Shown here in pieces: positions 1,142 to 45,185 of a stretch of 45,185 nucleotides of DNA. Where the stretch lies: positions 1 through 45,185 of IMG/VR virus record IMGVR_UViG_3300027933_000001. The stretch is one strand, 5' to 3'. Numbering within the stretch: position 1 is the first letter of the stretch; each line of letters starts with the position of its first letter. The notes beneath the pieces were generated by a model that saw only the letters and a list, made by a program, of their open reading frames with translations, was not told the origin of the DNA and did not search any database. A program made the translations under genes and the position numbers.

Positions 1142-1409
1142 AAAGAAAGATAACACGTTCGAATTAGGAGAAACGATAAATACAGCAGTTGATGGAAGGA
1201 AAGTGAAAGGTGTAGTTATAGGGAAATACAGCATAAAATCTGCTAAGTTTATTGTTAAATGGAGTGGATTCGATGACGTAGAGAAATGGATAAGTTCTGC
1301 GTTAAGAGAGAACCATAATAAACAAGGTCTAGTAATATACTTGATAAGGTTATCTGAAATCACAGCTGTGATAAAAAAGAAGAGAACAAAACTTGCATCA
1401 AAAGGTTAG
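1142..1409 (+). pseudogene. 3' fragment of a gene interrupted by the tnpB element; Tudor/chromo-barrel-like motif
   Basis: Frame of the 1203 ORF stays open back to the element end (KKDNTFELGETINTAVDGRKVKGVVIGKYSIKSAKFIVKWSGFDDVEKWI). Confidence 0.45.
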
Positions 1410-1753
1410 CAACAACCTTCTTCTTCTAACTCTTCTTCGTATTCTTTCTCCTCTCTCGCATCACCCATGGCAAATTTCTTCACTATCTCCAGGTCTGGCT
1501 TTATTTCATTAATCAATTCCATTTCAGCCTCAAAGCTCAATCTGCCACCAGCGTCTAGATCGTACTCCCTTGCAAATTCGTGTATCGTCTCTATTATTCT
1601 GTGTATAGCATCTCTTAATTCAGGGAAGTCATCAGTCCACGCTTCTTCTCCAGCCAGTCTGAGGTCTATGTCGGGATAATCTATTTTTCCCTCTAGAAAT
1701 AATCTAAGGTCTCTTAAAACATGTCTTGCATATTTTTCTGGATGGAGTGGCAT
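1406..1753 (-). CDS. Acidic hypothetical protein
   Basis: 115-aa ORF with plausible composition and Glu-rich tail. Confidence 0.7.
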   Translation of the reverse strand: MPLHPEKYARHVLRDLRLFLEGKIDYPDIDLRLAGEEAWTDDFPELRDAIHRIIETIHEFAREYDLDAGGRLSFEAEMELINEIKPDLEIVKKFAMGDAREEKEYEEELEEEGCC

Positions 1754-1832
1754 AATCAGTCATAACATGGAAAAAATAAAACCCTTTTGCTTCACTTAAC
1801 CGTTTGTCCATACTTAGCCCTCAACCACCTAC

Positions 1833-3368
1833 TTACTGTAATATTTCTATATTAGGTGTAGGTCTAGCTAGGACTGGCTGTGTGCCTAACACTGAAGGCT
1901 GTACTTGTGTTGCACTATCGTAAACTACGTTATTTACTTTACTAAGCTCTTGTATATATTGTTGTAATTCACTTAAGCAGTCATGTCCAGATAGTTGAGA
2001 GTATTGTTGTAACGCATTCAATATACAGTTAGCTTGTTTAGCATAATATCTAGCACTACGCTTATCCACGCCAAGTAAAGCCTGGTAAGCTTGCTGTGCA
2101 TACGCAGAAAACTGTTGTTTAAGTGTAGATATTTTTTGAGATAACGTAAGACCAGGAGTATTTTGAAGAACTTTTGCTAATGTTGCATACTGCGGATATT
2201 CATTTTCGAATGTAATATAATCGTTCTCTTGTAATAGTTGTAAAGGCGTTGTAGTAGTAGGACTAGTTGTTGTCGTAGAACTCTGTGTTGAACTTAACGT
2301 ACTAGTATTACTAGACGATGTCGTCGTTTTTGTCGTAGAACTCTGTGTAGTACTTAAAAGGGAAATGACCTCTTTCATATCACAACAATATGTTCCTGCA
2401 TACATTTGTGCATATTTGCAATTGTAAGATGGTAACCTTAGGCTTTGTAAGCTACTTGCAGTTAGCGTTCTATTATTCAGTTCCTCACATATTATTGTTA
2501 AATTTTTATAAATTTGGCTCCACGCATCTACAACTTCTAAACTAACTCCAGCCTGGTTTTGGAAGTTTATCGCGTTCTGTAAGCAGTCATATATTTCTTG
2601 AAGTAAAATCCTGAGGTTTGCAGTTGATATACTAGACCCAGATATGTATCCCTTAACCAAGGAATAGACTTCATCAATTGCTTCATAAATATAGTTTGAT
2701 ATATTTCCTACTTTATTAAATAATTCGTTTATTAGAGAACTTGTAGAACTAGAAGAGGAACTAGTAGGACTAGACTGTGTTGGCTGTGCAGTACTAGACA
2801 ATGGCGTTGTTGTTGTCGTAGAACTCTGTGTTGAACTTAACGTACTAGTATTACTAGACGATGTCGTCGTTTTTGTGGTTGGTGGTGTAGAACTCTGTGT
2901 AGCACTAGACGATGTTGTAGAACTAGTTGACGACGTCGTAGAACTCTGAGACGATGTTGTAGAACTAGTTCTTGCTATTTCATTTAGTACAACTTGGGGT
3001 GGTGAATTGCTAGTCTGAATTTGTGGATAACCGTCAGATTCTTGAGTAATATAAATAGTAAAAAATGGAACTGATGATGGTACATGCACAGTACTTATAG
3101 CTTTTCTCCCCTGAGCCTCAACCATGATACCTATATAATAAGAAAAATGTGGAAACTTAGTACGTGGATAAACCGCCTTGTATTCTAGAGAAGTCGGTAT
3201 AAAATTAGTGTTGAGTAGCTTGACAATTTGGTGTTCTGACAGTTTTAATTGAAATGCTTGCGGTGTAGTTATCCCAGATTCTTTTGTCCCTTCGTATTCT
3301 TTTGCATATTCCGCTACATCTACCGTTACCGTCCCTGGGTATAGATTTAATAGGTATACTTCAGTCAT
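1833..3368 (-). CDS. Ser/Thr-rich linker-containing protein
   Basis: 511-aa ORF with two long S/T tracts separating helical domains. Confidence 0.85.
   Translation of the reverse strand: MTEVYLLNLYPGTVTVDVAEYAKEYEGTKESGITTPQAFQLKLSEHQIVKLLNTNFIPTSLEYKAVYPRTKFPHFSYYIGIMVEAQGRKAISTVHVPSSVPFFTIYITQESDGYPQIQTSNSPPQVVLNEIARTSSTTSSQSSTTSSTSSTTSSSATQSSTPPTTKTTTSSSNTSTLSSTQSSTTTTTPLSSTAQPTQSSPTSSSSSSTSSLINELFNKVGNISNYIYEAIDEVYSLVKGYISGSSISTANLRILLQEIYDCLQNAINFQNQAGVSLEVVDAWSQIYKNLTIICEELNNRTLTASSLQSLRLPSYNCKYAQMYAGTYCCDMKEVISLLSTTQSSTTKTTTSSSNTSTLSSTQSSTTTTSPTTTTPLQLLQENDYITFENEYPQYATLAKVLQNTPGLTLSQKISTLKQQFSAYAQQAYQALLGVDKRSARYYAKQANCILNALQQYSQLSGHDCLSELQQYIQELSKVNNVVYDSATQVQPSVLGTQPVLARPTPNIEILQ
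2266..2876. repeat. ~68-bp direct repeat (2266-2333 and 2809-2876) within the S/T-rich gene
   Basis: Both copies encode TKTTTSSSNTSTLSSTQSSTTT. Confidence 0.85.
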
Positions 3369-3572
3369 TCGTTTCTACCCTATACTTTCATCTTTTTAAG
3401 TGTTTAAAAATACATATTTTCCTTCTATGCAGGGTTGGACTTTCATTGAGGTTTCATGAATTCACATTCGATCTCACAGCTGTGGTACACTAAAGGGAGT
3501 TGCTTTACGCCCCCTTAACTTGGTAACATAAGATTTATTAACGTTATTCTCTCAATTTATGCTTGAGAGAAA

Positions 3573-4068
3573 ATGCTGACTTCCTCCCCGCCCTGGAAGG
3601 ACGAGGGTTCCCTCCCAGAGGGCTCATAGTTCCCACCATTGATTCGGGTTTACATCTCTCATTTGGTGGGCAGTCGGGGTAGTCAGACAGCCCCCCACTT
3701 GAATAGGGAGCTTTCATCGCCTAGCTCTAGTCCCTTAAAGGAAGGGAGAGATGATGGTTGCCCCTCCCACAGTCCCATTGAGCCCTCAATCGAGCTGGAG
3801 AGGAGCGTCGTTAGCGTTACTAAAAGAGAAAAAGAGATATTTAAACTTTTTACCACGCCCCTGGAAGGGGCGAGGCTTTCAGTTCATTGTAAGTATAAAG
3901 TTCAAGTATAAGGGAGAAGAGAAGGAAGTAGATATTTCAAAGATAAAGAAGGTTTGGAAAGTAGGGAATATGGTATCGTTCACCTACGACGACAACGGTA
4001 AGACTGGTAGAGGAGCATTAAGCCTAAAAGAAGCCCCGCAAGAGTTGTTGCAGAAACTCAATCATTAG
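3573..4068 (+). pseudogene. sul7d: Sul7d (Sso7d/Sac7d-family) chromatin protein gene split by an inserted element
   Basis: ATG 3573-3575 joined to 3889-4068 gives [60 protein letters not shown], closely resembling Sac7d; TATA-like TTTATTAA near 3534. Confidence 0.92.
3576..3888 (-). mobile_element. 313-bp non-autonomous IS200/IS605 derivative
   Basis: Right end near-identical to that of element 6197-7689 (reverse complement); left-end hairpin at ~3852-3877; flanking TTAC on minus strand; no target duplication. Confidence 0.85.
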
Positions 4069-4071
4069 AAT

Positions 4072-4593
4072 TCAACCTAACTTTTTCTTTATTTTCCTTC
4101 TTAATTCTCTTTCTAGTTTCTTGTTTTTGCTATATATATAATATGTATTATCTTTAGTTTTCCTTACAAGTACAACCTCTTTCAAATGTATCCTTATGTT
4201 TTTATCTCCAGGCTTTCCTGTAACCTCTATTTTTTCATTATCTCTTTTTATTTCAATTGAAGAAACTCTTTCAAATATCAATGAGTGAGCGAAATAGAAT
4301 ATATCTCCTCTTGTTTTTACTCTCAATAGGAGAATTCCACATGGAAAAATTAAATACCTATAGTGTTCTATTCCTTTAGAATCTTTTAATTTCAATATAA
4401 CACCTTTAGAAGTTTTTTCAAATTTTATCCCATTCTCATCATCTATCTTCAAAAAAAATTCATCATCATTTATTCTCTGAATAGTAAATGAATGTCGTGA
4501 TATTAAATCAACTATGTCTTTTTTAACCGTAATAATTTTCCCGTTCACCATACGTAAAAATTTTCTCAATATTTTTTTCTTGTAAATATACAT
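4072..4593 (-). CDS. Hypothetical basic protein (start may be 4551)
   Basis: 173-aa ORF. Confidence 0.65.
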   Translation of the reverse strand: MYIYKKKILRKFLRMVNGKIITVKKDIVDLISRHSFTIQRINDDEFFLKIDDENGIKFEKTSKGVILKLKDSKGIEHYRYLIFPCGILLLRVKTRGDIFYFAHSLIFERVSSIEIKRDNEKIEVTGKPGDKNIRIHLKEVVLVRKTKDNTYYIYSKNKKLERELRRKIKKKLG

Positions 4594-4845
4594 GGTGAAA
4601 ACTACCCTAATTAATTAGCTAGCTAAATAAATATATAAAAAATGATAGACGTGAGGAGGCAGAAAAATTAGAAAATGGGAAAAAGGAAGGCTTAGCATAT
4701 CTACTTATTAACTCCTAAGTCGCCTTTTACTAGAGTGAGGAGGTTATGTCACTCGTAAGTAAAGAAAAACAAAACGCACTTAAAAAGAAGAAGAAGCTAA
4801 CTGAGCTTAATGACGAAGATGCAAATGACGAGGAGGTAATTACAA

Positions 4846-5106
4846 ATGAGTAATATTTGCGAGTTACTCAAGACTGAATATGAGCAGAACATGCAGAGGT
4901 ATAATATTCCAGACAAATGGAAAGCAGTGGCATATAACGTGTTAGTAAAGCTAGGGTATTATGATGAAGAAGGAAATAAAATAAAAGACGATGCCGAGTT
5001 TATAAACAGAGTTTTCAAAGTTGCTGAAAAATTGGATTCACTACATGTCAGTAAGATAAACAAAATGATGAAGATATGCGGGGAGACAGTTGGAGAAAGT
5101 AATTAG
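4846..5106 (+). CDS. Hypothetical protein
   Basis: 86-aa ORF with GGAGG RBS; first of a tightly packed run. Confidence 0.75.
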   Translation: MSNICELLKTEYEQNMQRYNIPDKWKAVAYNVLVKLGYYDEEGNKIKDDAEFINRVFKVAEKLDSLHVSKINKMMKICGETVGESN

Positions 5107-5431
5107 AGAGAGCGAAGTTAAGAAACTCAAGAAGAGTGAAGATATCAGGAATAATGATGAATTACTTAAGTATATTAAGTCTCTAGAAGATGAGAATGAG
5201 AAACTAAAGAAGCAAATCGATGAACTACAGCAAAAACTGAAAGAGCTGGAACTAAATATTAATCAATTAATTTATAGTTTTTGTGACGCACTCAATAAGT
5301 TAAAAAAACCAGCATTTTACCTGGAAAAGCCAGTAAATACTAAATTATACCAGATAGTCACGATAAACTATACAGATTATTATGTTGTATCCTTACAATT
5401 ATGTGAGGAGCTGAAATGGGTCAAACAATAA
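5090..5431 (+). CDS. Coiled-coil protein
   Basis: Heptad-like LEDENEKLKKQIDELQQKLKELE. Confidence 0.7.
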   Translation: MEKVIRESEVKKLKKSEDIRNNDELLKYIKSLEDENEKLKKQIDELQQKLKELELNINQLIYSFCDALNKLKKPAFYLEKPVNTKLYQIVTINYTDYYVVSLQLCEELKWVKQ

Positions 5432-5784
5432 TCATAGTTGCTTCACAAGCACAATTAGTCTATTTTTATATTTTCTCATTTTTGGTTATTGCATTTCTTG
5501 GCGTAATTATTTGGCTGTATTTCCGCGGATTCTTCAGAAAAATAGGCATCTTATCTTTACTGATGTTCTCATCCTACATAATTATGTACGAAAGCGGGTT
5601 TGCGTTCACTACACCTACCGATTATAACGTGACGTTAACGAACCCGTACAATACTACTACCGTTGTAGACCAACCATTAGACTTCTATTATACTGTATTC
5701 TACCTATCTTTCGCTATAGCTATAGTATCTACTTTACTCCTAGTTTATGAAATAATACAATACATTGCAAGGAGGTTCTTCTAA
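5416..5784 (+). CDS. Small membrane protein
   Basis: Three hydrophobic segments; N-x-T sequons in loop. Confidence 0.75.
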   Translation: MGQTIIIVASQAQLVYFYIFSFLVIAFLGVIIWLYFRGFFRKIGILSLLMFSSYIIMYESGFAFTTPTDYNVTLTNPYNTTTVVDQPLDFYYTVFYLSFAIAIVSTLLLVYEIIQYIARRFF

Positions 5785-6195
5785 ATGGATAAGCTAGATA
5801 TAATAAAGCAGGTTTCCTTTTACCTCGACTCCCTTAATTATGGAATTTCATCAAAACTTTTTTCTGAAGACCTTATATTAACAGAATTGAAGAAAGCTAC
5901 AGTAAGCTATTTCTCACATAGTATTCTGAGTATTGTTGGAAGTATAGATTTGTCAAACGCAAAAATGCCCTCTCATGTTATATCAGCAATAATTAACTTT
6001 ATCAGAAGTAGAGCATACGATCTTGCAAAACTAGACCAAAGAATAATAGATAATAATTATCAAACTCTCTTCATCTACACAACAATAAGGAGCATAATAA
6101 TGATAATGGCTGAAAGGCTAGGCATAACAGATGAAATAAACTCATTGTTTAACAGTTTAGAAGAAGGAGAGAACATTAGAAATAAAATAGGCTGA
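5785..6195 (+). CDS. Hypothetical protein
   Basis: 136-aa ORF abutting upstream stop. Confidence 0.75.
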   Translation: MDKLDIIKQVSFYLDSLNYGISSKLFSEDLILTELKKATVSYFSHSILSIVGSIDLSNAKMPSHVISAIINFIRSRAYDLAKLDQRIIDNNYQTLFIYTTIRSIIMIMAERLGITDEINSLFNSLEEGENIRNKIG

Positions 6196-6196
6196 C

Positions 6197-7689
6197 AAAA
6201 TGAAAGGCAAACCTCGCCCCTTCTAGGGGCGGGGTAAAAAATTTTAAGCGAAACATCTATTTCTCTTTAAGATGTCCTCCTCTGGTCAACTCTCAAGATA
6301 TGAGGAGCGGGAGCCGATTTCTCCCGCAATACCAGAGGAAGGCGTCTACGAAGTCGAGTATAAGAATAAGAGGACAAATGTTGTTAGACTTCTCCCAAAC
6401 GGTTTTCAGGAAAGGAAGTTAAGGAAGTTTGCAGACACGTCTGCCAGGTTGTTCAACGAGGTCAACTACGAGAGAAGACAGCAGTTCTTCCAACAACATC
6501 AAGTTGACTTCAAATCGACATGGGGCAAATACTACGAGAAGTACAAGGGTATACTAGGTGTTAATGCACAAGCAGTTCTTCAGAAGAACAACGAGGCATG
6601 GTCGTCATTCTTTTCACTCCTCAATCTGAAGAAAAAAGGAAAATTGCCACCGCATATGAACCACGTTTCACCACCTCGTTATTGGAAGAAGGAGAAGAAG
6701 AGGAAGTTACTCCTAGTTATCAGACAAGATAGATATGTTGTAGATGAGAAGAACCACAAGCTCATCCTCAAGGACTTCAACCTCGAAATAGAATTTGTTG
6801 GTGGGTTGAGGTGGTATGGCAAACAAGGTAGGTTGGAGATATATTATGACGACGTTGAGAACGCGTGGTACGCTTCAATACCAGTTGAAGTAGGCGTAGA
6901 AGAAACAAAGACTGGAAAGAAGAGTAAGTACATTGTGAGAGGAGAGAGAAAGTCAATCCAGGTTGAAGCCCCGAAGGGAAACAAGGTCGCATCCATCGAC
7001 TTGGGCATAAACATCCTAGCAAGCGTTGTAGTGGACGACGGTACTTGGTTACTCTATAAAGGTGTTAGAGCTAAGGAAGACTACTTCTATCTTCAAAAGA
7101 AGATAGCCGAGGTTCAGTCTCTCGCAGACAAGGCAAGAAATCTAGGAGAGTATGAAGCTCAGGAAGAACTAAACAGAGAGAAGAGGAGACTCTTTAAGAA
7201 ACTAACCAAGCGTCTACTTCACCTGTACAGAACCTTGGCATCTCATATGGTTAAAACACTTCACGATCAAGGAGTTTCGACCATTTATCTAGGCTACCCC
7301 TTCAATATCGCACAGGACAGGGGAAATAAATTCACCGTGAATTTGTGGTCTTACCATAAGTTGATGAACGCCATTAAGTTGAAGGCTCAAGAATACGGTA
7401 TGAAAGTGTACGAAGTTGTTGAGTACAACACATCAAAGTACTGTGCATACCATAACGTTGAAGTCAGTAGGAGACCGAGAGGAGTAGTCACTTGTCCTTT
7501 AGGGCACAAACTCCATTCAGATCTTAACGGTGCATTGAATATCTTGAAGAAAGCTGTTGGCATCACAATTTCAACAGTGAAGAAACCGTTATCTTTCCTA
7601 GTACTTCATAACGGAGTAGCACCCGTAAAGGGGTGTAACACCTAAGACCTCGGTGAACCCTCGTCCTTCCAGGGCGGGGAGGAGGTCAG
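6197..7689 (+). mobile_element. IS200/IS605-family solo-tnpB element (IS1341-like organisation)
   Basis: Left hairpin CTCGCCCCTTCTAGGGGCGGGG after TGAC; right hairpin GAACCCTCGTCCTTCCAGGGCGGGGAGGAGGTCAG; no tnpA. Confidence 0.88.
6272..7645 (+). CDS. tnpB: TnpB endonuclease
   Basis: SIDLG, VVEYNTSKYC, CAYH..CPLGH, HSDLNGALNI motifs. Confidence 0.92.
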   Translation: MSSSGQLSRYEEREPISPAIPEEGVYEVEYKNKRTNVVRLLPNGFQERKLRKFADTSARLFNEVNYERRQQFFQQHQVDFKSTWGKYYEKYKGILGVNAQAVLQKNNEAWSSFFSLLNLKKKGKLPPHMNHVSPPRYWKKEKKRKLLLVIRQDRYVVDEKNHKLILKDFNLEIEFVGGLRWYGKQGRLEIYYDDVENAWYASIPVEVGVEETKTGKKSKYIVRGERKSIQVEAPKGNKVASIDLGINILASVVVDDGTWLLYKGVRAKEDYFYLQKKIAEVQSLADKARNLGEYEAQEELNREKRRLFKKLTKRLLHLYRTLASHMVKTLHDQGVSTIYLGYPFNIAQDRGNKFTVNLWSYHKLMNAIKLKAQEYGMKVYEVVEYNTSKYCAYHNVEVSRRPRGVVTCPLGHKLHSDLNGALNILKKAVGITISTVKKPLSFLVLHNGVAPVKGCNT

Positions 7690-7810: not shown

Positions 7811-7814
7811 CTCT

Positions 7815-8163: not shown

Positions 8164-9195
8164 ATGATGCTATACATCGTTAGCAATTCAAAACTAAAGT
8201 CAGGTATCGGGCGTTATGCAAGCAGATTGCATTCTTACTTCCCAAATAGTAAATTGGTTCTTTTTAGAATGAAACCGTGGGAGGAGCCTGACGGTTTCGA
8301 TGAAGTTGTGCAATATAAATATTTTAACAAACTAGGAATAATTTACGATCTAATTACAAAGAGTGGTAAGTTCAGTAAATTTGCGTCTAAAAAACTGCTT
8401 CACTTAGTTTCGCCAGATTTCTTCCATGTTGCAAACGGTAGTATAGGAACAGTTCACGATCTGTTCCCACTATCTGAAAACACAGCTGTGAGTTCATATT
8501 ACCCGTTCTATTACAGGCTTTATTTCAAGTACGAAATAACACAAATCAAAAACCTGGAAGTTGTTATCGTCCCTAGCTTCTATACAGCAAGACAGCTGAA
8601 GAGATACGCAGACGAGAACGGCATCGAATTACCTAAGGTTATAGTAATCCACCATAGCGTTCCGAGGAGTTTTGTAAACGAAAGAGACGGAAACGTTATG
8701 AGGATCCGTGAAGAACTAGGTTTGCCTAAAGATAAGAAGATTGTAATTAACGTTGCACATGATGAACCAAGAAAGGGACTGAGTATAATAGATAGGATAC
8801 GTGAAGAATTACATAAGCTCGGCTTTATAATTATAACAGTTAATAACAAACGTGGTGATAAGTACTTCCTCGGCATAGATGATGAACTCCTCATTAAATT
8901 ATATATTGCTAGCGATGTATATTTCGCTCCTTCTATCGATGAAGGATTCAACATACCTATTATTGAAGCATTAGCAAATTCGTTACCAGTTGTTGCAAGA
9001 GATATACCCGCACATAGAGAGATATATTCATTCAACAATGGCGGAATTTTATTAGTAAGAGAGGAAGACTTCGTCCCAGCTATAATAAAAGCAAGCTATA
9101 TGAAGGCTAAACTTAATGAGTACTTTCTAGAAGATAGAGAAAGAGAAGAATACAAAAAAATTTATTCTAGGTTTCTGACTCCCTTCTCGCCCTAA
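8164..9195 (+). CDS. GT-B (family 4-like) glycosyltransferase
   Basis: TVHDL and PSIDEGFNIPIIEALANSLPVVARDIP (E-x7-E) motifs. Confidence 0.92.
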   Translation: MMLYIVSNSKLKSGIGRYASRLHSYFPNSKLVLFRMKPWEEPDGFDEVVQYKYFNKLGIIYDLITKSGKFSKFASKKLLHLVSPDFFHVANGSIGTVHDLFPLSENTAVSSYYPFYYRLYFKYEITQIKNLEVVIVPSFYTARQLKRYADENGIELPKVIVIHHSVPRSFVNERDGNVMRIREELGLPKDKKIVINVAHDEPRKGLSIIDRIREELHKLGFIIITVNNKRGDKYFLGIDDELLIKLYIASDVYFAPSIDEGFNIPIIEALANSLPVVARDIPAHREIYSFNNGGILLVREEDFVPAIIKASYMKAKLNEYFLEDREREEYKKIYSRFLTPFSP

Positions 9196-11643: not shown

Positions 11644-11925
11644 TTGCTATATATATTTATTCTGATGTGTGCAATCAAACATATGAAAATCGGTAGATAT
11701 AAGGTAGAGTGCGACGATGAGTTCTGTTACATTACCAATCCAGACGGGAAAGTAACTACAATAGACAAGGACAATTTTAGCACATTCGCTAAAAACTTAG
11801 CAAGAACTATAGCATTAGAAAAAATACCAGTGAACGAAATAGAGAATTATGATAAGAGAAAATTAGATGAAATGACTAACCGCATCTATTCCCAAATGAT
11901 GAGATCAGTAATGTATAACACCTGA
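11644..11925 (+). CDS. Hypothetical protein (start probably at MKIGRY)
   Basis: ORF track. Confidence 0.65.
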   Translation: MLYIFILMCAIKHMKIGRYKVECDDEFCYITNPDGKVTTIDKDNFSTFAKNLARTIALEKIPVNEIENYDKRKLDEMTNRIYSQMMRSVMYNT

Positions 11926-11988
11926 AAACACAGATGTGTTTTCAAAAGTTTTTTCTCTACTTTTAATATCGTTCTTAACAATACACAT

Positions 11989-14389: not shown

Positions 14390-15457
14390 ATGTATAATGT
14401 TCTTCTTAAAGTTTCATTACTAAACGATTTAAAAATATACGACCCTATCTTCAATTTATTTCCAAGAGATCAGCGTATAATGGAAGAACTAAAGGTAAGC
14501 ATAAAAAAAGATGGGTTAAGGGAACCTATAGTTGTAGACGCAGACAATTATATAATAGACGGAATGACGAGATACCTCGTACTAAAAGAGTTAGCTAAGG
14601 AGAGCGATGAATATTCTAAAGTCCTCACGCTTCAATATAGAGACTTAAAAATAACCAAGGATCCGCAAACTGCAAAGTTGTTAGCACTTGTTCTAAATGT
14701 AATAAGAAGACCGATGAAACTCGAGGAGCTCGTTAATTATATTGAGGAGATATATAAGATCAGAGAATCAACTAATCAAACAGCGAGGATAGATAATGAT
14801 ATAGATAAGAAGATAGAGGAAACACTTCAAAACATTACAAAAAAGAAGATACCTATCGATGACGTTAAATATATGGTGTTATGGGTAAAATCACATTACC
14901 CGCATATTTATAATTATACAAAAAAGAAAGGAATAGTATTTAATAAGAAGGAAATAGAGAAATTATTGAGTTTAACTAAGAATTTTGCTAATGATTTCAC
15001 TGATGAAGATTTAGATTTAATTTTCTCAAATATCCGCAAGGTTATTACAGATTATTATGCTGAACTTAAAGATGCTAAGGATGCTAGGGAATTTATGTCA
15101 AAACTTAGCGAATTATTAGAAAGAGAAAAAGCTAGAAAAACGGAGAAATTGAGTGCGAAGATAGAAAAGAAAAGGAGTGATTACCGTAGGGACGACCATA
15201 AGGAAAACGATAATAAGAAAGAAGAAATTAGGATAGAGAAAAATAGTAAAGCAGACCAACAGCAACATATTAGCAAGGAAGAACTTTGTAAATATATTGA
15301 CTTAGCATCTTTTAGAAAATTTATAGATAAAATTGAGGAGAAAGTTAAGAAGAATGAGGAAGTTGAGATAGATAGGGATCTTTTCTATTCTATCAAAACG
15401 ATACTTGAAAATGAGTTATCTGACGGAACCGCCTTTAAATACTTCAAGGTGGTTTGA
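14390..15457 (+). CDS. ParB/Srx N-terminal domain protein
   Basis: LKVSIKKDGLREPIVV..IIDGMTRY..NVIRR. Confidence 0.85.
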   Translation: MYNVLLKVSLLNDLKIYDPIFNLFPRDQRIMEELKVSIKKDGLREPIVVDADNYIIDGMTRYLVLKELAKESDEYSKVLTLQYRDLKITKDPQTAKLLALVLNVIRRPMKLEELVNYIEEIYKIRESTNQTARIDNDIDKKIEETLQNITKKKIPIDDVKYMVLWVKSHYPHIYNYTKKKGIVFNKKEIEKLLSLTKNFANDFTDEDLDLIFSNIRKVITDYYAELKDAKDAREFMSKLSELLEREKARKTEKLSAKIEKKRSDYRRDDHKENDNKKEEIRIEKNSKADQQQHISKEELCKYIDLASFRKFIDKIEEKVKKNEEVEIDRDLFYSIKTILENELSDGTAFKYFKVV

Positions 15458-20058: not shown

Positions 20059-20161
20059 GAGGAGGAAGTCAGTGGAATGTGAAATCACAGTGGTGCGGAA
20101 AGATGAATTAAGCAAAGCGATATCCTTAAAAACTGTCAAACAAAGCATATCAAGACCTAAA

Positions 20162-26253: not shown

Positions 26254-26402
26254 CCTTTTGCTCTAGAAGGGGCAAAGGTTTGTCGTCCGTTATCACAGCT
26301 GTGATTGCAAAAAGATGGGTTAGTAACGCAGTTCAAAGCGGAGGAAGTCAGCACACTTTTAGCACTTTTAGATTTTTTAGCCAGACTGCAGATCTTAAGA
26401 TT

Positions 26403-30767: not shown

Positions 30768-30849
30768 CCATTTTTTCCTTCTGTTGAAATCACATCTGTG
30801 TTTTCACATAAAGCAAAATCGTTAAATTTGCGTGCTTAAGATTCCAGGC

Positions 30850-31170
30850 ATGAAACTTGCGGTTAAGCTTGAGGACTATATATTGGAGCTACTTGACGCA
30901 TACGCGGAAGAAAACGGTATGACACGTAGCCAAGCACTTAGGGTTGCGTTAAAAGAAGAAATACCTCTTATTAACGAAGATGGTGGAGGAAAGAAGAATA
31001 AGATTGCGATATTCTATGTTACGAAAGATCTTCTTGATCATATTGATAAAATTGCGGAGGAAAATGGAGTTACACGTTCAGAGGTAGTAAGAAATGCAAT
31101 ATTGAAACTAGTTAATGAATATAAAAACAGAATAATACATAGAGGACGAGTAGGGAAGTTAACGCTCTGA
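30850..31170 (+). CDS. Tandem ribbon-helix-helix (CopG-like) regulator
   Basis: LDAYAEENGMTRSQALR and IDKIAEENGVTRSEVVR. Confidence 0.88.
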   Translation: MKLAVKLEDYILELLDAYAEENGMTRSQALRVALKEEIPLINEDGGGKKNKIAIFYVTKDLLDHIDKIAEENGVTRSEVVRNAILKLVNEYKNRIIHRGRVGKLTL

Positions 31171-37193: not shown

Positions 37194-37680
37194 TGATTTT
37201 CACCCCATATGAAGAGTTTCTTTTGTAAACAGTATATATATGGTTGTCCCCAACAATCTCTACATTAAAAGGTAATGTAAAATGCGGAATATTAGAAACT
37301 ACATAGGATGATATAATCTCGTTGCCTGAAAGCGTAAATAATAACGCCATTATGCTATCTGGTAGCTTGTAAACTAAAAGGACGTCTCTGCAGAGTAAAT
37401 AAGGTTCGTCGTCATATTTTATAATCTCAGCTTGGGAGTTCTCAAAACCTTTTATCATCCTACACTTACGCTTTGTTTGTGGGTATAAAAGAATAGAAAC
37501 GTCTATGTAATTCAGATTTTCAATTATATTCTTGATAACGCACTTAGCAAAATTTTTATCTTTAGTACATTCGGCTACCTTAAAAAACAACATTTGCCTA
37601 AATTTCTCTATTTCCTCCTTAGGGGGAGTATTTATATTTTTTAATAACATATTTTGGTACATGTGCATCCCCGAAATCAC
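37183..37680 (-). CDS. Hypothetical protein
   Basis: 165-aa ORF. Confidence 0.7.
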   Translation of the reverse strand: MISGMHMYQNMLLKNINTPPKEEIEKFRQMLFFKVAECTKDKNFAKCVIKNIIENLNYIDVSILLYPQTKRKCRMIKGFENSQAEIIKYDDEPYLLCRDVLLVYKLPDSIMALLFTLSGNEIISSYVVSNIPHFTLPFNVEIVGDNHIYTVYKRNSSYGVKINEE

Positions 37681-37706
37681 ATCTGTGATTGCAGAAGAAA
37701 AAACCG

Positions 37707-38378
37707 TCAGAATACTCCTGCGTTTTTAAGTATTAAGTACACTGCGTACCTTAGCACTTTAGACCTTGTAACTTTATGATTTATTGCAAAGTTATCGAGC
37801 TTCTCTAACAACTTCTTATCCATCTTTATCGACAACACACCAGTATCACCGTCAAGAAGCTTCTTATCATCGTAATTGGCATCAATCTCTTTGCTATTTA
37901 AAATAGTATTAGCAAGTGTATAGCGTATTAATTCGCCAGCAGTTTTACCTATTTTGCATGAATACGAAATAAGTAAATTTTTAATTTCCTTTGAGATCTT
38001 TACTGTAATTATAATGTTGTTGTGTTCAAGAACATCTTCTCTATATTGTACACCAACACTTTCTAGTCTGTGCACCTTCACTGCAAAAGGCTTAGGCTTT
38101 GCTGTCGTATAAACCCTTATTTTATACAGTAAATCGTTGCCAAACATAAAACTTATACGTTGACCATTCTTATCCATCATCACTACGTATTGACCATTAT
38201 TGAAAGTCACAAAAAATCCGCTCTCGCTTAGTATTTTTAGCAGTACATTAACTTTGTTTTTAGAAATATAATCGAGATGAAAAGTGAATTCTGTATCTGC
38301 TTCTCTAGTTATAGTGTATTTTATATTTAAAGAATCTAAATGTTCTTTTATTAGATCTACAACTGATGACAGAGTCAT
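37707..38378 (-). CDS. Protein with two C-terminal RHH domains
   Basis: [15 protein letters not shown] and [27 protein letters not shown]. Confidence 0.8.
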
Positions 38379-39260: not shown

Positions 39261-40112
39261 TTAAAATAATTGAGAAATTTTCCTTTCTTCACTAGCTATT
39301 GGTATGTCATATTTGTACGGTGGTTTTAGTTTTTCCCTCAATAACTTTAGCGTGTTTATTATACTTTCGTAGTCGAGCTCAGCCATTAACTCGTCGTAAC
39401 TGCTAGATCCATAATATGCTGAATATATTGACCAAGGTGCTTCATAAAGCAAACTGGTTACGTGTTCGACCATATATTTATGAAATAGTAGTATTTTATT
39501 CAAATTTTCAATAAACTCTTTCAGGCATGCCTTAGGTAATGCGTAGCCTTTTATTGATAATAAAGAATTGAGGAGATACAATGCGAGACCAGTAACCTTA
39601 TAGAACCCACCACCTTCTTCAGTTACAAGACCTAGGGCTAACAACGGTACTACGTCCTTTTTAGGTGCTTTAAATCTGAGCGATGAAATGTAAGAAGTGT
39701 ATTTATTTAGCAGTTCGGATAAATCTCGCAACTCAATTAAACTTGATTTATGAGCCAGTAGTGTTATGACCAATGCTATAATACCTAGCTCCACAGTTTT
39801 ATAATATTCATCGTCGATAAGGTCTACATCAAAATATTTCTTTATAATATCCTCAAATTTGCTTAACGCGTCAGGAGATATATTAAGAATAACATCGCTT
39901 ACAAACCCATTTTTAAAAGCTTCTATTATAAGCCTCTCGTTTTTTATTGGCTTGCTTGAAAAGAAAACATTGAGAAAGTTCATTGCTTCTTCAGCAACAA
40001 TATTAGGGGAAAGGGAAGGGCTTTCCACATTTAACACCCCGAGAACAAAATACCAGGTCGCCTTTTTAGAAGATACTTCCGATTTAGAAAAACGAATAAC
40101 TAGAGCTATCAT
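39261..40112 (-). CDS. Hypothetical protein
   Basis: 283-aa ORF starting immediately after the terminal CRISPR repeat. Confidence 0.75.
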
Positions 40113-40401
40113 ATTTCAGTTCTTCCTTATTTCAACTGAGGTAGAGATGTTAAAGAGACATATGGAAAACTTTTAGTTCTTACTTATTTCGACAAAAGTG
40201 GGTACTGGTAAGGTAGAATGGAATAGAGTTTTTCAGTTCTTACTTATTTCAACTATTTTTACCCCGTCCCTGGAAGAGGCGGGGCAACTTCCCGCTACGA
40301 CGCCCCCTTCCCTCGCTCTACCCATCTTTTAGTTCTTCCTTATTTTAGCTCACTTTCCAAAAATAAAAACTTTTCAGTAGGCACTTTTAGTTCTTCCTTA
40401 A
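40113..40401 (-). CRISPR. Virus-borne mini-CRISPR array: 4 full repeats plus 1 truncated repeat, no cas genes in window
   Basis: 24-bp repeats at 40113, 40170, 40230, 40326 and 40384 (partial); minus-strand consensus GTTGAAATAAG(G/T)AAGAACT(A/G)AAAG; spacers of 33, 36, 72 and 34 bp. Confidence 0.82.
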
Positions 40402-40403
40402 CC

Positions 40404-41937: not shown

Positions 41938-41958
41938 TTCTGACGTCCTCCCCGTCAG

Positions 41959-42884: not shown

Positions 42885-43951
42885 GTGTGCAATAGGATTC
42901 TTATTGAAAACCAGCCCTTGCTCATGTGCAATATCATTCTTATTGACTCTTTCTTTTGCTTGTGTGCAGAGCTATTATTAATTGAGGTATATATTTGCTT
43001 ATGTGCAATAGTGGTATTATTGAGCAACTTAATTGCTTATGTGCAATACAAATATTATTGAATTCTACTATTGCTTATGTGCAAAACGTGTATTATTGAA
43101 TGCATTCTTTGCTTATGTGCAGGTAGATTGTTATTGACTTACCTCATTGCTTGTGTGCAGTCAACTGATTATTGAAACGATTTCCTGCTAATGTGCAGGT
43201 TATTTGTTATTGAACTTTGCTCTTGTTTATCTGCAACGACCACGTTATTAAGCCTTTTGCTTGCTTGTGTGCATTGCTTATCTTATTGAAAGGTATTATT
43301 GCTTGTGTGCAGTACATTAATTATTGAAATAGCTGATTGCTTGTGTGCAGTTGCATCGATATTGAGGAGTAGTATTGCTTATGTGCAGGTAAGGGATTAT
43401 TGAGCTATATGTTTGCTCATGTGCAGTTGATCCTTTATTGAGTGTTTCTCTTGCTAATGTGCGGTCATGAGTTTATTGAATAATGTTATTGCTTGTGTGC
43501 AGTTAGATTGTTGTTGAATATGTTTCTTGCTTGTGTGCAATACGCCTCTTACTGAATTCCTGAATTGCTCGTGTGCAATAGGGTTCTTGTTGAAAACCAA
43601 CCCTTGCTCATGTGCAGTTTTACATTTATTAACGATACCTTTTGCTCATGTGCAAGACGGCGTTTATTGACGTTATCTTTTGCTTATGTGTAAGTTTGCC
43701 GTTATTGATCTTTATTTTTGCTTATGTGTATATGACCTCTTATTAATTTTTTCGCTTGCTTATGTGCAGTTTGTATTTTATCAACAATCAGGATTGCTTA
43801 TGTGCAGTAGGGTGTTTATCGACTATACTTATTGCTTGTGTGCAGTCCAACCGTTATTGAGGTATATATTTGCTTATGTGCAAGAATGGCTTTATTGAGC
43901 GTACTTCTTGCTTATGTGCAATATCGTTCTTATTGATTTTTTCCTTATGTA
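42885..43951 (-). ncRNA. TIGR-type tandem interspaced guide array (28 units, 38-bp period)
   Basis: Plus-strand unit TTGCTT(A/G)TGTGCA-N9-TTATTGA-N9 with almost all spacers unique; begins directly after the stop codon of the Nop/IS110-like gene. Confidence 0.88.
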
Positions 43952-44983
43952 TTATTTAATAATCTTTTTCTTCTTAAGCCACGTTGTAACCTCCTCTCTG
44001 TTTATACCTAGTTCTTCTATTATCTTTTCAAATTTAGCTTTATATTTTGCAGTCTTCGTGTCAACGTAATAGTCTGTAATTGGCGATTCAATGAAATCTT
44101 CGTGCTTCTTGAGGACTTCGTATTCTTTCCCCAACACTACCTTGTAAGCCTCATGTAATGGCACACCTTGCCTATAGTGTAAAGAGATTGCGAAATACTG
44201 TGATAATAGTAAGGATATTGCTTTCCTGATAGCAGTCCTCTGTACTCTTAGCTTATTCCAGTCTGGATGCTTAGTTGCGATTTCTTCTTTAAATGATTTT
44301 ATTATCTTTGCGTAAACACCGCCAGCTAATATGAGGTTGTTAGCTAAAATTCCTAGCAGAAATGTTTTTACTGTTCTGTTATACTTAACGTTTTTCGCTG
44401 ACGTGCCAATAAGTTTCGTCCCATCGTTAGGGCATAACCACCCTTCCTTCGAGGGAATTGCTGGTTTCCCATTCGAGGACTCACCAGCGTAATAGTAATA
44501 TCCGCATTTAGAACATGTAAACATTACGGCTAAACCAGCGTACTTCCTGAACTTATTAATGTTATACTGAAACTTTGGTGGATATGCATAAACGATAAGT
44601 CTAGCACCGTTAACAGCTCCTATCCCCCTAATAAACACCAGGAAGTTAGTAAATTCAGGGAACTTAGTTACCACCTTGCCTATAAGTCCCTTGGCTATCT
44701 CCTCTTGTCTGAGTAGTTCCATGAACCTCTCTATGAGGTCATTAGACGGCGTTTCTTCAACAATTCTCACAGGCTCACCGCATACTGGACATTTATCGCG
44801 TTTTTCGTCTTCCTTAAGTAATATCATATGACCGTTCTTGCACGCTGTATATCTCCTTAGGAAGACCCACTTATTGTTCTCTTTTTTTGCCCCTATCCTG
44901 TTCCCAAATGCTACTCTAAGTTTTATTATATCATCTCTGAATGCTACCAAATCTCTTAAAGGAACTAAATCTGCCTCGCTCAT
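43952..44983 (-). CDS. Tas-like (TasA-type, nuclease-less) Nop/IS110-related RNA-binding protein with two Zn-ribbon insertions
   Basis: LRDLVAFRDDIIKLRVAFGNRI coiled coil; FLVFIRGIGAVNGARLI, FRKYAGL, YNRTVKTFL, RTAIRKAISLL; no DEDD/RuvC or HNH seen; adjacent dual-spacer array. Confidence 0.82.
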   Translation of the reverse strand: MSEADLVPLRDLVAFRDDIIKLRVAFGNRIGAKKENNKWVFLRRYTACKNGHMILLKEDEKRDKCPVCGEPVRIVEETPSNDLIERFMELLRQEEIAKGLIGKVVTKFPEFTNFLVFIRGIGAVNGARLIVYAYPPKFQYNINKFRKYAGLAVMFTCSKCGYYYYAGESSNGKPAIPSKEGWLCPNDGTKLIGTSAKNVKYNRTVKTFLLGILANNLILAGGVYAKIIKSFKEEIATKHPDWNKLRVQRTAIRKAISLLLSQYFAISLHYRQGVPLHEAYKVVLGKEYEVLKKHEDFIESPITDYYVDTKTAKYKAKFEKIIEELGINREEVTTWLKKKKIIK

Positions 44984-44989
44984 GCCTCA

Positions 44990-45127
44990 TCACTTCGCAG
45001 AAACATATATATTGTATAGCTCTGCATATATTACTTGGACTAGAAATAATGCATCTTTGATATTTCCTGACTTAATCAAGTTATCTAATTCTTTTATGTA
45101 TTCATTTATCTCATTTATTTTTTCCAT
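44990..45127 (-). CDS. Small protein directly upstream of the tas-like gene (start MEKINE)
   Basis: 45-aa ORF ending 6 bp before the tas ATG. Confidence 0.55.
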   Translation of the reverse strand: MEKINEINEYIKELDNLIKSGNIKDALFLVQVIYAELYNIYVSAK

Positions 45128-45158
45128 TCTAAAACGCCCCCGAAAACACAGGTGTGAT

Positions 45159-45185
45159 AAAATAAACGGCAACCCTCGCCCTTTA
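45159..45185 (+). mobile_element. Start of another IS605-type left end (truncated by window)
   Basis: AAAATAAACGGCAACCCTCGCCCTTTA resembles 6197 and 20014 ends. Confidence 0.6.

What the first reader, a model, noticed from the sequence alone, without database searches (positions are those of the whole stretch)
1356..45161. Dispersed palindrome GAAAWCACANNTGTGWTTTC: candidate parS-like or master-operator site
Seen: core CACANNTGTG at 1361, 3475, 8481, 11929, 26294, 30791, 37678 and 45147, with a degenerate copy at 20086. Most have GAAA(A/T) and (A/T)TT flanks; 11923-11944 is a near-perfect 22-bp palindrome. Sites are mostly intergenic or at gene ends, but one lies mid-gene. Inference: a binding site for a dimeric viral protein, such as the ParB-domain protein (14390) or a tandem RHH protein (sites lie next to both 30850 and 37707), used in segregation, packaging or global regulation.
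Basis: partly seen in the sequence, partly recalled or inferred. Interest (0 to 1): 0.62.

Follow-up and report, generated by a model that had tools for sequence, protein, structure and literature searches.

The report
Dispersed palindromic operator of an archaeal virus
A 22-base palindrome recurs about 18 times per genome in Acidianus tailed spindle virus and its relatives, and it looks like the docking site of a sequence-specific DNA-binding regulator that controls a set of viral operons.

Summary
The core CACANNTGTG occurs 8 times in the window, against 0.41 expected. Seven copies carry the flanks that make the 22-bp palindrome TGAAAWCACAG|CTGTGWTTTCA. 3475 is a core-only match, probably chance, and 20086 is a surviving half-site.

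The window is a 45-kb fragment of a close relative (90-94% identity) of Acidianus tailed spindle virus (ATSV), an archaeal virus. ATSV has 18 copies, 14 of them in the 11.7% of the genome that is intergenic (P = 2e-10). Across 32 orthologous comparisons CACA and TGTG never change. The W positions and the central dinucleotide vary freely and do not covary, and the hairpin has no stability at 80 C. This fits a double-stranded DNA protein site, not an RNA or DNA hairpin.

Sites lie 26-28 bp upstream of TATA boxes, including the promoter of a tandem ribbon-helix-helix (RHH) regulator at 30850. Others sit in leaders or intercistronic gaps directly before Shine-Dalgarno sequences. Only 14 of 62 intergenic gaps carry one, so this is a regulon, and it covers most core and virion operons.

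The best reading is an operator for a virus-encoded tandem-RHH regulator. The binder is inferred, not shown. The ParB-like reading is weak. A second, very distant virus lineage carries the same motif.

The parts
1355..1376 (.). Palindrome copy TGAAATCACAGCTGTGATAAAA (one good half, one degenerate half). It lies about 30 nt past the stop of the C116a virion-protein homologue (1406-1753, minus strand), inside the 3' end of the IS-truncated F141 homologue.
   Evidence: (28.1 bits). Orthologous to ATSV 50990.
3469..3490 (.). Core-only match CACAGCTGTG without the conserved flanks. Probably chance, and not counted as a member.
   Evidence: 13.3 bits, against 23 or more for all the others. No ATSV copy scores at this position.
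8475..8496 (.). Palindrome copy TGAAAACACAGCTGTGAGTTCA inside the glycosyltransferase gene (8164-9195, plus strand). This is the one mid-gene copy.
   Evidence: 31.6 bits; Glycos_transf_1. Identical in ATSV at 45514.
11923..11944 (.). Best copy, TGAAAACACAGATGTGTTTTCA. Its first three bases are the stop codon of the E93 homologue. The dyad lies 27.5 bp before the TATA box at 11961-11968 and 55 bp before the ATG at 11989 of the operon E272 / AAA+ ATPase / ParB_N-like E355 / E80.
   Evidence: (31.9 bits). The ATSV orthologue 42449 is its exact reverse complement with collinear flanks.
20080..20095 (.). Decayed copy. One half-site (TGAAATCACAG) survives upstream of the major coat protein promoter (TATA word at 20112-20134, ATG near 20162).
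   Evidence: (ATSV has a full site at 34321).
26288..26309 (.). Palindrome copy CGTTATCACAGCTGTGATTGCA, between the stop of the D131 homologue (26253) and the large conserved D1241 homologue.
   Evidence: (29.4 bits). In ATSV an IS element is inserted about 10 nt beyond the orthologous copy at 28121.
30785..30806 (.). Palindrome copy TGAAATCACATCTGTGTTTTCA. It starts 18 nt past the stop of the D1241 homologue. The dyad lies 26 bp before the TATA box at 30822-30828 and 54.5 bp before the ATG of the tandem-RHH gene.
   Evidence: (32.2 bits). The same spacing is seen in ATSV at 22414.
37672..37693 (.). Palindrome copy between the stop of the A219 homologue (N-terminal domain plus tandem RHH) and the next gene, the A163 homologue. 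On the minus strand it directly abuts a Shine-Dalgarno-like GGGGA.
   Evidence: (29.6 bits).
45141..45162 (.). Palindrome copy CGAAAACACAGGTGTGATAAAA. On the minus strand it directly precedes a GGGGG Shine-Dalgarno-like run and the start of the B45 homologue.
   Evidence: (23.4 bits). Orthologous to ATSV 8020.
30850..31170 (+). Candidate binder 1: a 106-aa tandem ribbon-helix-helix protein, the homologue of ATSV F106 'transcriptional regulator'.
   Evidence: Pfam RHH_1 twice, E 9e-14. phrog_876 'transcriptional repressor', 2e-23. The best PDB sequence hit is single-chain Arc.
37707..38378 (-). Candidate binder 2: a 223-aa protein (ATSV A219 homologue) with an N-terminal alpha/beta domain of unknown function and a C-terminal tandem RHH.
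   Evidence: AF2 model residues 121-219 form beta-alpha-alpha twice, pLDDT 77-92. Foldseek top hits are ~110-residue chains of the F-plasmid relaxosome, with AvtR and single-chain Arc lower in the list.
14390..15457 (+). Weaker candidate: a 355-aa protein (ATSV E355 homologue) with a short ParB_N-like stretch at residues 24-68.
   Evidence: PHROG 'ParB-like partition protein', E 7e-5. Pfam ParB_N E 0.05, below the cutoff. The AF2 model is unusable, pLDDT 47.

Best explanation
The repeat is a 22-bp double-stranded DNA operator, TGAAAWCACAG|CTGTGWTTTCA. It is read by a two-fold symmetric assembly of a sequence-specific DNA-binding protein. The most likely binder is two copies of one of the virus's own tandem ribbon-helix-helix (RHH) regulators. 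The best candidate is the 106-aa protein at 30850-31170; the second is the protein at 37707-38378. Each tandem-RHH chain is a built-in pseudo-dimer that would read one asymmetric 11-bp half-site, the way two Arc dimers read the 21-bp Arc operator.

The roughly 18 sites per genome define a regulon that covers the regulator's own promoter and most operons for conserved core and virion proteins. Some sites lie about 55 bp upstream of the transcription start, just above BRE/TATA. Others lie in the leader or intercistronic gap directly before a Shine-Dalgarno sequence. The occupied protein therefore most likely tunes or blocks transcription, either by nucleating at the site and interfering with TBP/TFB recruitment or by acting as a roadblock. 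It could thereby time or silence the virion and core gene set.

Shown here: the motif, its enrichment, its conservation footprint, its placement, and the presence of the RHH proteins. Inferred: that a protein binds, which protein it is, and the sign of the regulation.
For: Enrichment: 8 cores against 0.41 expected in the window. ATSV has 18 full sites against about 0.5 matrix hits (at a lower score cutoff) per shuffle.

Placement: 14 of 18 ATSV sites lie in the 11.7% of the genome that is intergenic, P = 1.7e-10.

Conservation footprint over 32 orthologous comparisons: CACA and TGTG are 100% conserved and the GAAA/TTTC blocks 88-100%. The W positions (72-84%) and the central NN (62-88%) vary, and the flanks are 70-90% conserved.

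Against a hairpin: W5 and W16 are complementary in only 11 of 25 sites, and the hairpin free energy is about 0 at 80 C.

Promoter spacing: a TATA-like hexamer starts 26-28 bp from the dyad at four independent promoters (F106, E272 operon, C110, D87), against about 0.9 expected. One site sits exactly midway (67.5 and 68.5 bp) between two divergent starts.

Candidate binders: tandem RHH proteins are encoded at 30850 and 37707, and the first has a top-scoring site in front of its own promoter. The known archaeal-virus tandem-RHH regulator AvtR has eight potential sites in AFV6 and represses its own gene (PMC5569661).

Host genomes: the strict 22-mer is absent from the searched set of 185,579 species genomes except for 7 bacterial matches that I take as chance.

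A distant relative with a 32%-identical F106-like protein lacks the motif but has its own promoter-region palindrome twice.
Against: No binding data and no RNA data exist; no public RNA run holds the virus.

Nothing computational separates the two tandem-RHH proteins from each other, or from the CopG-like protein, a coiled-coil protein (5078-5431), or the ParB_N-like protein.

The F106 homodimer prediction gave no verdict.

A second lineage (GC 0.47), sharing only MoxR (31%) and VWA (24%) proteins with ATSV, carries the same motif about 10 times in about 24 kb. No F106 or A219 homologue lies on those fragments. The whole-library search also found no F106 relative above 38% identity outside the ATSV cluster. 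This leaves room for a conserved host factor or a different viral protein.

Sites that abut Shine-Dalgarno sequences in both lineages could also hint at an RNA-level role.

The coat-protein promoter of the window virus has lost half of its site, so the site is not indispensable there.
Confidence: 0.55

Rival explanations
1. The sites belong to a host (Sulfolobales) DNA-binding factor that the virus recruits. The palindrome would be recognised by a conserved cellular regulator or chromatin protein rather than by a viral one.
For: The same 22-bp consensus occurs in a second, very distant lineage (contigs L038, L044, L088, L102, GC 0.47). That lineage shares only MoxR and VWA proteins with ATSV, and no F106 or A219 homologue lies on the available 24 kb. 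ATV and ATV2 carry three look-alike palindromes each. F106 has almost no close relatives in 1.8 billion representative proteins.
Against: The strict 22-mer is absent from every Sulfolobales genome among the 185,579 species representatives; the only hits are 7 bacterial matches that I take as chance. A host regulon would be expected to show at least one strict copy. SMV1, SMV3, SMV4, YNP1, STSV1/2 and STIV, which infect related hosts, have none. I could not scan host genomes with a degenerate pattern, because no handle for them was available.
Confidence: 0.15
2. A ParB/KorB-like system.
For: There is weak ParB-like similarity at residues 24-68 (PHROG E 7e-5; Pfam ParB_N E 0.05). The best palindrome (11923) sits at the promoter of the operon that encodes this protein. 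Sites are spread around the genome, with a cluster of 5-6 in about 3 kb (ATSV 51.0-54.5 kb; L086 2122-4699) and one beside the annotated stem-loop region of ATSV.
Against: The similarity is below Pfam's cutoff. No HTH was detected and the structure model was unusable. No ParA-type ATPase was found among the window proteins I scanned; only AAA+, MoxR and one unassigned ATPase-domain protein turned up. STSV1/2 encode homologues (27%) next to an ATPase yet have no such motif. The fixed spacing to TATA boxes and the abutment to Shine-Dalgarno sequences is not what partition sites need. The 38-bp iterated array at 42950-43940 is a better centromere or origin candidate.
Confidence: 0.12
3. The element acts as a nucleic-acid hairpin: a REP-like element, an intercistronic mRNA hairpin (stabiliser, processing or termination signal), or a cruciform.
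For: Eleven of 18 ATSV sites lie 8-67 nt after a stop codon. Several lie inside apparent operons directly before a Shine-Dalgarno sequence, in both lineages. Orthologous copies can be exact reverse complements of each other, which suggests intrastrand template switching at the palindrome. IS200/IS605-type elements are present in these genomes.
Against: The stem-position pair W5/W16 shows no covariation: it is complementary in 11 of 25 sites, which is the chance level. Many copies would fold only as a 3-bp stem. The free energy is about 0 at 80 C, a temperature I assumed for the thermoacidophilic host. The stem bases are invariant rather than compensating. Three sites lie between divergent gene starts, where no transcript ends. 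No T-run follows the sites and there is no Rfam match.
Confidence: 0.07
4. A recombination or IS-target hotspot, or chance similarity with no function.
For: An IS lies about 10 nt from the ATSV 28121 copy and another about 250 nt from window 1355. Several alignments between ATSV and the window virus break down within about 40 nt of a site.
Against: Only two IS copies are involved, and one of them is not adjacent. The breakpoints are ordinary features of intergenic DNA. Chance is excluded by the shuffles and by the perfect conservation of the core.
Confidence: 0.03

Closest known systems
AvtR of Acidianus filamentous virus 6 (tandem-RHH regulator) and its sites
   Same: AvtR is a small archaeal-virus protein of about 100 aa with two RHH motifs in one chain. 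It has several (eight potential) imperfect inverted-repeat sites across the viral genome that are conserved among relatives, and it represses its own gene (PMC5569661). The A219 model also matches AvtR weakly by fold.
   Different: The AvtR consensus (ATnnTnnTAnnACnTT) is unrelated to this motif. Here there are about 18 sites of 22 bp, many of them in leaders or intercistronic gaps, and binding is untested. F106 has no detectable sequence match to AvtR.
Arc / CopG / Mnt-type RHH operators of phages and plasmids
   Same: A palindromic operator of about 21-22 bp read by two RHH dimers whose centres lie about one helical turn apart. Here the conserved blocks flank W at +/-5.5 bp from the dyad, which fits that geometry. 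The best PDB sequence hit of F106 is single-chain Arc.
   Different: Those operators usually occur at one or a few sites at the regulator's own locus, not about 18 sites across a 70-kb genome. The geometry argument is from recalled knowledge, not a test.
Stoperators of cluster A mycobacteriophages (L5 gp71) and the dispersed C1 operators of phage P1
   Same: Twenty to thirty copies of one operator are scattered through a viral genome, mostly in short intergenic gaps inside operons, so that one repressor silences the whole genome by blocking initiation and elongation (recalled knowledge).
   Different: Stoperators are asymmetric, oriented with transcription, and bound by an HTH repressor. The present site is a palindrome in an archaeal virus, and only 14 of 62 intergenic gaps carry it.
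KorB-OB of IncP plasmid RK2, and ParB-parS in general
   Same: A palindromic site present about 12 times around a 60-kb replicon, at promoters and far from them, bound by a ParB-family protein that both represses and partitions (recalled knowledge). A weakly ParB_N-like protein is encoded here, behind the best site.
   Different: ParB membership is not established for the 14390 protein, no ParA partner was found, and the site sequence is unrelated to OB or to bacterial parS.
Virus-specific regulatory sequences around early promoters of archaeal viruses (Nat Commun 2024, PMC11065993)
   Same: Each virus has its own conserved sequence around a set of promoters. In SMV2 this includes inverted repeats proposed to bind a viral repressor.
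   Different: Those motifs include or overlap the BRE/TATA core of early or anti-defence genes. ATSV was not among the viruses for which a motif was reported. The present site is separate from the BRE/TATA core and is associated with core and virion operons.

Membership tests
RHH-type operator (Arc/CopG/AvtR kind) | An RHH DNA-binding protein is encoded by the same replicon | tested here: met
   Two tandem-RHH proteins lie in the window, at 30850-31170 and 37707-38378. A CopG-like protein is encoded elsewhere in the genome.
RHH-type operator (Arc/CopG/AvtR kind) | The operator is built of two or more sub-sites on one DNA face, about 8-11 bp between centres | tested here: inconclusive
   Two 11-bp half-sites are present. 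The conserved blocks GAAA and CACA flank a free W at +/-5.5 bp from the dyad. This is compatible with the feature but is not a structural test.
RHH-type operator (Arc/CopG/AvtR kind) | A site lies at the regulator's own promoter (autoregulation) | tested here: met
   The top-scoring site 30785-30806 has its dyad 26 bp upstream of the TATA box of the 30850 gene. The same arrangement is seen in ATSV. Position only; regulation was not tested.
RHH-type operator (Arc/CopG/AvtR kind) | The protein binds the site specifically | not testable with these tools
   No protein-DNA modelling or binding assay was available. The homodimer job gave no verdict.
ParABS / KorB-OB partition-silencing system | A ParB-family protein (ParB_N CTPase domain plus HTH plus dimerisation domain) | tested here: inconclusive
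   There is only a 40-residue ParB_N-like stretch: PHROG E 7e-5, Pfam E 0.05 against a cutoff of 26.3 bits. No HTH was detected. The AF2 model has pLDDT 47.
ParABS / KorB-OB partition-silencing system | A ParA/Soj-type Walker ATPase partner | tested here: not met
   The neighbouring ATPase is a classical AAA protein (PF00004). None of the 23 window proteins I scanned hit ParA or CbiA families. Not every ORF was scanned.
ParABS / KorB-OB partition-silencing system | The site resembles known parS or OB, or clusters at the par locus | tested here: not met
   The sequence is unrelated to either, and the sites are spread over the genome. One perfect copy does lie at the promoter of the operon that holds the ParB_N-like gene.
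Mycobacteriophage-type stoperators | An asymmetric site with one orientation relative to transcription | tested here: not met
   The site is a palindrome, and both halves are conserved.
Mycobacteriophage-type stoperators | Many copies in short intergenic gaps within operons | tested here: met
   Copies lie between a stop codon and the next Shine-Dalgarno sequence in 38-56-nt gaps, for example ATSV 5878, 8020, 14333 and 54051 and window 37672 and 45141.
REP/BIME-like or hairpin RNA element | A stable stem-loop maintained by compensatory change | tested here: not met
   W5/W16 are complementary in 11 of 25 sites. Free energy at 37 C is -1 to -9 kcal/mol and about 0 at 80 C. The arm bases are invariant rather than covarying. 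No Rfam family matches.
Intrinsic terminator | A G+C-rich hairpin followed by a T-run at transcript ends | tested here: not met
   The arms are A+T-rich, no T-run follows, and three sites lie between divergent gene starts.

The most novel reading that the evidence does not exclude
The palindrome may not be a private operator of one viral repressor. It could be the loading or recognition site of a conserved factor shared by at least two very distant archaeal virus lineages: either a host Sulfolobales protein or a KorB/ParB-like viral protein that combines genome-wide silencing with genome maintenance. Its roughly 18 sites, the 5-6-site cluster and the copy beside the putative origin would then organise the whole viral chromosome rather than single promoters.
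Probability: 0.12. Interest if true: 0.75.

Novelty: new member of a known kind. Interest (0 to 1): 0.5.

Why it matters
Very few regulators of archaeal viruses have known DNA targets. The review lists SvtR, AvtR, F55, C68 and p106 as the characterised gene-specific factors (PMC5569661). Nothing is known about gene regulation in the large tailed spindle viruses. This motif gives a sharply defined, easily testable cis-element: a 22-bp site with an invariant CACA/TGTG. It comes with a short list of candidate binders and a predicted regulon that includes the coat-protein paralogues and the giant conserved proteins. That makes temporal control or carrier-state silencing of ATSV directly approachable by EMSA, DAP-seq and in vitro transcription. 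The motif can also serve as a marker for recognising ATSV-like contigs in hot-spring metagenomes. Its presence in a second, barely related lineage raises the question of who reads it.

Tried and rejected
- **RNA evidence:** none of the 24 public runs that hold the sequence is recorded as RNA, and all are kept as contigs. I therefore did not use read laying, and no transcript ends could be mapped.
- **F106 homodimer prediction:** no verdict, score 0.00. This counts neither for nor against binding.
- **Structure of the ParB_N-like protein:** the single-sequence AF2 model had pLDDT 47 and was unusable. Only homologues at 90% identity or more exist for an alignment.
- **Co-occurrence test for the binder:** it failed for lack of genomes.
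  - F106 and A219 have only near-identical relatives in IMG/VR and in the word search.
  - The exhaustive search found F106 relatives at 31-38% identity, and their contigs lack the motif.
  - ATV ORF189 and STIV A137 are F106 homologues; ATV has only three look-alike sites and STIV has none.
  - STSV1/2 have E355 homologues and no motif.
- **Host-genome scan with a degenerate pattern:** not possible.
- **ATSV description paper:** PMC4794678 is not held, so I could not check whether its authors mention the motif. The GenBank record annotates stem-loops and repeat regions but not these sites.
- **Unrelated metagenome hits:** single strict matches, including a family of near-identical repeats with shared flanks (for example L041, L049-L053), are an unrelated dispersed repeat or chance.
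- **IS targeting of the palindrome:** rejected. Only one of two IS copies is adjacent to a site.

Full report
**What the window is.** Megablast places the window on Acidianus tailed spindle virus (ATSV, KU645528, 70.8 kb, circular, Bicaudaviridae, host Acidianus sp. CHAS) at 90-94% identity over about 80% of its length. The window is an IMG/VR record judged 64% complete. A second record, G003 (64.1 kb, 91% complete), is base-for-base identical to window 9992-45185 and extends it. Contig L086 is identical to window 1-6584 and extends it 5.5 kb to the left. All genes named below are ATSV homologues mapped by tblastn.

**The observation.** CACANNTGTG occurs at the eight stated positions; shuffles give 0.41 on average and never more than 2. 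With flanks, the element is the 22-bp palindrome TGAAAWCACAG|CTGTGWTTTCA. Over 76 half-sites the counts are T 56, G 63, A 45, A 57, A 73, W, then invariant CACA, then mostly G. On a half-site weight matrix the true copies score 23-32 bits and form a group well apart from everything else. Window 3475 scores 13 bits and has no flank similarity, so I treat it as a chance core match. 20086 is one surviving half of a site that is complete in ATSV. The matrix was trained on copies selected by their core, so it describes them rather than testing them independently. The independent tests are the shuffle counts and the conservation analysis.

**Distribution among genomes.**
- ATSV has 18 copies and G003 has 11 good ones.
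- L086 adds five copies within 2.6 kb just left of the window. These match an ATSV cluster of six between 51.0 and 54.5 kb.
- SMV1, SMV3, SMV4, YNP1, STSV1/2 and STIV have none.
- ATV and ATV2 have three look-alikes each, of the form AAAAACACAGCTGTGTTTTT.
- The strict 22-mer occurs in none of the 185,579 species genomes except for seven scattered bacterial matches that I take as chance.
- In metagenomes it marks many ATSV-like contigs. It also marks a second lineage (L038, L044, L088, L102 and their ENA twins, GC 0.47) with about ten copies in about 24 kb. That lineage shares only a MoxR ATPase (31%) and a VWA protein (24%) with ATSV.

**Is it selected?**
- Fourteen of 18 ATSV copies lie in intergenic DNA, which is 11.7% of the genome (P = 1.7e-10).
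- Thirteen positions are shared between ATSV and the window virus. Identity is 90% inside the sites against 77% in the 70-nt flanks.
- Over 32 distinct orthologous comparisons that include metagenomic variants, CACA and TGTG are 100% conserved and the outer GAAA/TTTC blocks 88-100%.
- The two W positions (72% and 84%) and the central dinucleotide (62% and 88%) change freely.

**DNA duplex or hairpin?** The two W positions would pair in a hairpin, yet they are complementary in only 11 of 25 copies, which is the chance level. Many copies would form only a 3-bp stem. The predicted RNA hairpin energy is -1 to -9 kcal/mol at 37 C and about 0 at 80 C, a temperature I assumed for the thermoacidophilic host. 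The arms are invariant rather than compensating. No Rfam family matches and there are no tRNAs. This is the signature of base-specific recognition of duplex DNA by a two-fold symmetric protein, with W and NN as non-contacted positions.

**Placement relative to genes.** Three settings recur.
- *Upstream of a promoter.* A TATA-like hexamer starts 26-28 bp from the dyad at four independent promoters: F106, the E272 operon, C110 and D87. About 0.9 such cases are expected by chance. In the window this gives dyad 11933.5, TATA 11961-11968 and ATG 11989, and dyad 30795.5, TATA 30822-30828 and ATG 30850. Both genes look leaderless, so the site centre is near -55. One ATSV site lies exactly midway between two divergent starts (67.5 and 68.5 bp).
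- *Directly before a Shine-Dalgarno sequence.* The palindrome's last bases run into GGGGAGG or GGTGGTG, 5-12 nt before the start codon, in gaps of 38-56 nt after the previous stop. Examples are ATSV 5878, 8020, 14333 and 54051 and window 37672 and 45141. The same abutment is seen in the second lineage. A TATA-like word 31-50 bp upstream of the dyad is present in several of these. The copies may therefore lie at or just after a start site rather than inside an operon. Without transcript data I cannot tell.
- *Inside genes.* There are a few such copies (window 8475; ATSV 53925 and 69058).

Only 14 of 62 ATSV intergenic gaps of 22 nt or more carry a copy. This is a regulon, not a general promoter or terminator feature. 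The operons behind sites contain six of the eight genes that the ATSV record marks as conserved among large spindle viruses: coat protein D135, F737, D331, D1241, F518 and B2246. They also contain the coat-protein paralogue C116b.

**Candidate binders.**
- *30850-31170:* a 106-aa protein with two RHH_1 domains (E 9e-14). It matches the PHROG family 'transcriptional repressor', and its best PDB sequence hit is single-chain Arc.
- *37707-38378:* a protein with an N-terminal alpha/beta domain and a confidently modelled C-terminal beta-alpha-alpha repeated twice (pLDDT 77-92). The best structural matches are ~110-residue chains of the F-plasmid relaxosome, which I take to be the tandem-RHH protein TraY (recalled, not named in the output). 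AvtR and single-chain Arc appear further down.
- *14390-15457:* only a 40-residue ParB_N-like stretch below Pfam's cutoff, and no usable model.
- *5078-5431:* a lineage-specific coiled-coil protein, another conceivable dimeric binder.

A tandem-RHH chain is an asymmetric pseudo-dimer, which suits an asymmetric 11-bp half-site. Two chains on the palindrome would repeat the geometry of two Arc dimers on the 21-bp Arc operator. That geometry is recalled knowledge, not a test. The 30850 gene has a top-scoring site in front of its own promoter, as expected for an autoregulated RHH protein. For this reason I rank it first.

**Attempts to identify the binder by co-occurrence.** These failed for lack of diverse genomes. 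One suggestive result came out. A distant ATSV relative (L124: integrase 55%, ThyX 84%, F106-like protein 32%) lacks this motif. Instead it carries its own 20-bp palindrome, TGAAAACT-style in form but different in sequence (TGTAAACT-N4-AGTTTACA), twice in promoter regions (0.03 expected). This fits a virus-encoded reader whose specificity drifts together with its sites.

**Comparison with known systems.**
- The characterised archaeal-virus regulators have unrelated consensus sites: SvtR, AvtR (tandem RHH, eight potential sites in AFV6, represses its own gene), F55 and C68 (PMC5569661).
- The aCcr1-box of Sulfolobales and its viral homologues is a different 9-bp motif (PMC9976878).
- A 2024 survey of regulatory sequences in archaeal viruses reported virus-specific motifs around early promoters. 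These include inverted repeats in SMV2. No motif was reported for ATSV (PMC11065993).
- In number and placement, the closest functional analogues are mycobacteriophage stoperators and KorB-OB of RK2 (recalled knowledge). The membership tests show that the site is not a member of either.

**Verdict.** The element is real, selected, and specific to the ATSV lineage, plus one distant second lineage. It is best explained as the operator of a dimer-like sequence-specific regulator, probably a viral tandem-RHH protein, controlling a regulon of core and virion operons. I give about 0.85 to 'protein-binding site on duplex DNA', about 0.55 to 'viral RHH operator acting on transcription', and about 0.35 to the 30850 protein specifically. 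It is a new member of a known kind. It is of moderate interest, and more so if the shared reader of the two lineages turns out to be a host or ParB/KorB-like factor.

Noticed in passing
window 42950-43940: A long array of about 26 units with a 38-bp period. Each unit carries the words TTGCTTRTGTGCA and TTATTGA separated by variable spacers. It lies between the B149 and B343 homologues and corresponds to the unexplained 'repeat_region' 9232-10146 of the ATSV record. It looks like an iteron array (origin) or a centromere-like protein-binding array, and is a better partition-site candidate than the dispersed palindrome.
   Followed up: partly
window 40110-40400: Five copies of a repeat of about 28 nt (CTTTTAGTTCTTCCTTATTTCAACT-like) spaced 57-60 nt apart. 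The ATSV record labels the matching place 'possible viral CRISPR locus'. No Rfam CRISPR family matched at gathering threshold.
   Followed up: partly
window 1-1104 (and L086 1-726; G003 end): An IS200/IS605-type TnpB gene (OrfB_IS605 plus Cas12f1-like TNB domains) runs off the left end and truncates the F141 homologue. The ends of the window and of G003 both fall in IS copies, which probably broke the assemblies. ATSV has a different IS (E429/D194) inserted about 10 nt from the orthologue of the 26288 palindrome.
   Followed up: partly
L038, L044, L088, L102, L106, L108, L110 (JGI 3300026510, ENA ERZ27262649): A second lineage (GC 0.47) carries the same palindrome, TGAAAACACA(GA/TC)TGTGTTTTCA, about ten times in about 24 kb. 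Some copies are in pairs 55 or 81 nt apart. It shares only MoxR (31%) and VWA (24%) proteins with ATSV. It also encodes a serine resolvase and a protein with a zinc ribbon plus an HTH. One of its contigs was binned into MAG GCA_026988765.1.
   Followed up: partly
window 11923-11944 vs ATSV 42449; ATSV 51875 vs L092: Orthologous copies are exact (or nearly exact) reverse complements of each other while their flanks stay collinear. This suggests whole-palindrome flips, by template switching at the palindrome, rather than independent point changes.
   Followed up: no
window 20112-20134: The coat-protein promoter carries a 23-nt BRE/TATA word, GCAAAGCGATATCCTTAAAAACT. It recurs almost unchanged at the ATSV C110 promoter and may be a second shared promoter signature. 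The window holds only this one copy.
   Followed up: partly
window 30822-30850 vs ATSV 22327-22400: The tandem-RHH gene looks leaderless in the window virus (TATA 21 nt before the ATG). In ATSV it has an extra leader of about 45 nt with a GGTG Shine-Dalgarno sequence. The distance from palindrome to TATA is unchanged.
   Followed up: no
L124 1367-1386 and 4700-4719 (ENA ERZ1669403 NODE_304): A distant ATSV relative lacks the motif but has its own 20-bp palindrome, TGTAAACT-N4-AGTTTACA, twice in promoter regions (0.03 expected). It also has an F106-like tandem-RHH gene and a second small RHH gene.
   Followed up: partly
ATV 16771, 42741, 45017; ATV2 14798, 39715, 41997: Three conserved look-alike palindromes, AAAAACACAGCTGTGTTTTT, occur in each two-tailed virus genome (controls 0). 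They may be a low-copy relative of the ATSV motif.
   Followed up: partly
L041, L049-L053, L061, L066, L076, L084, L091, L100: A family of metagenome contigs shares a different dispersed repeat whose centre happens to match the pattern (TGAAATCACANNTGTGATTTCA with common flanks). It is unrelated to the virus.
   Followed up: no
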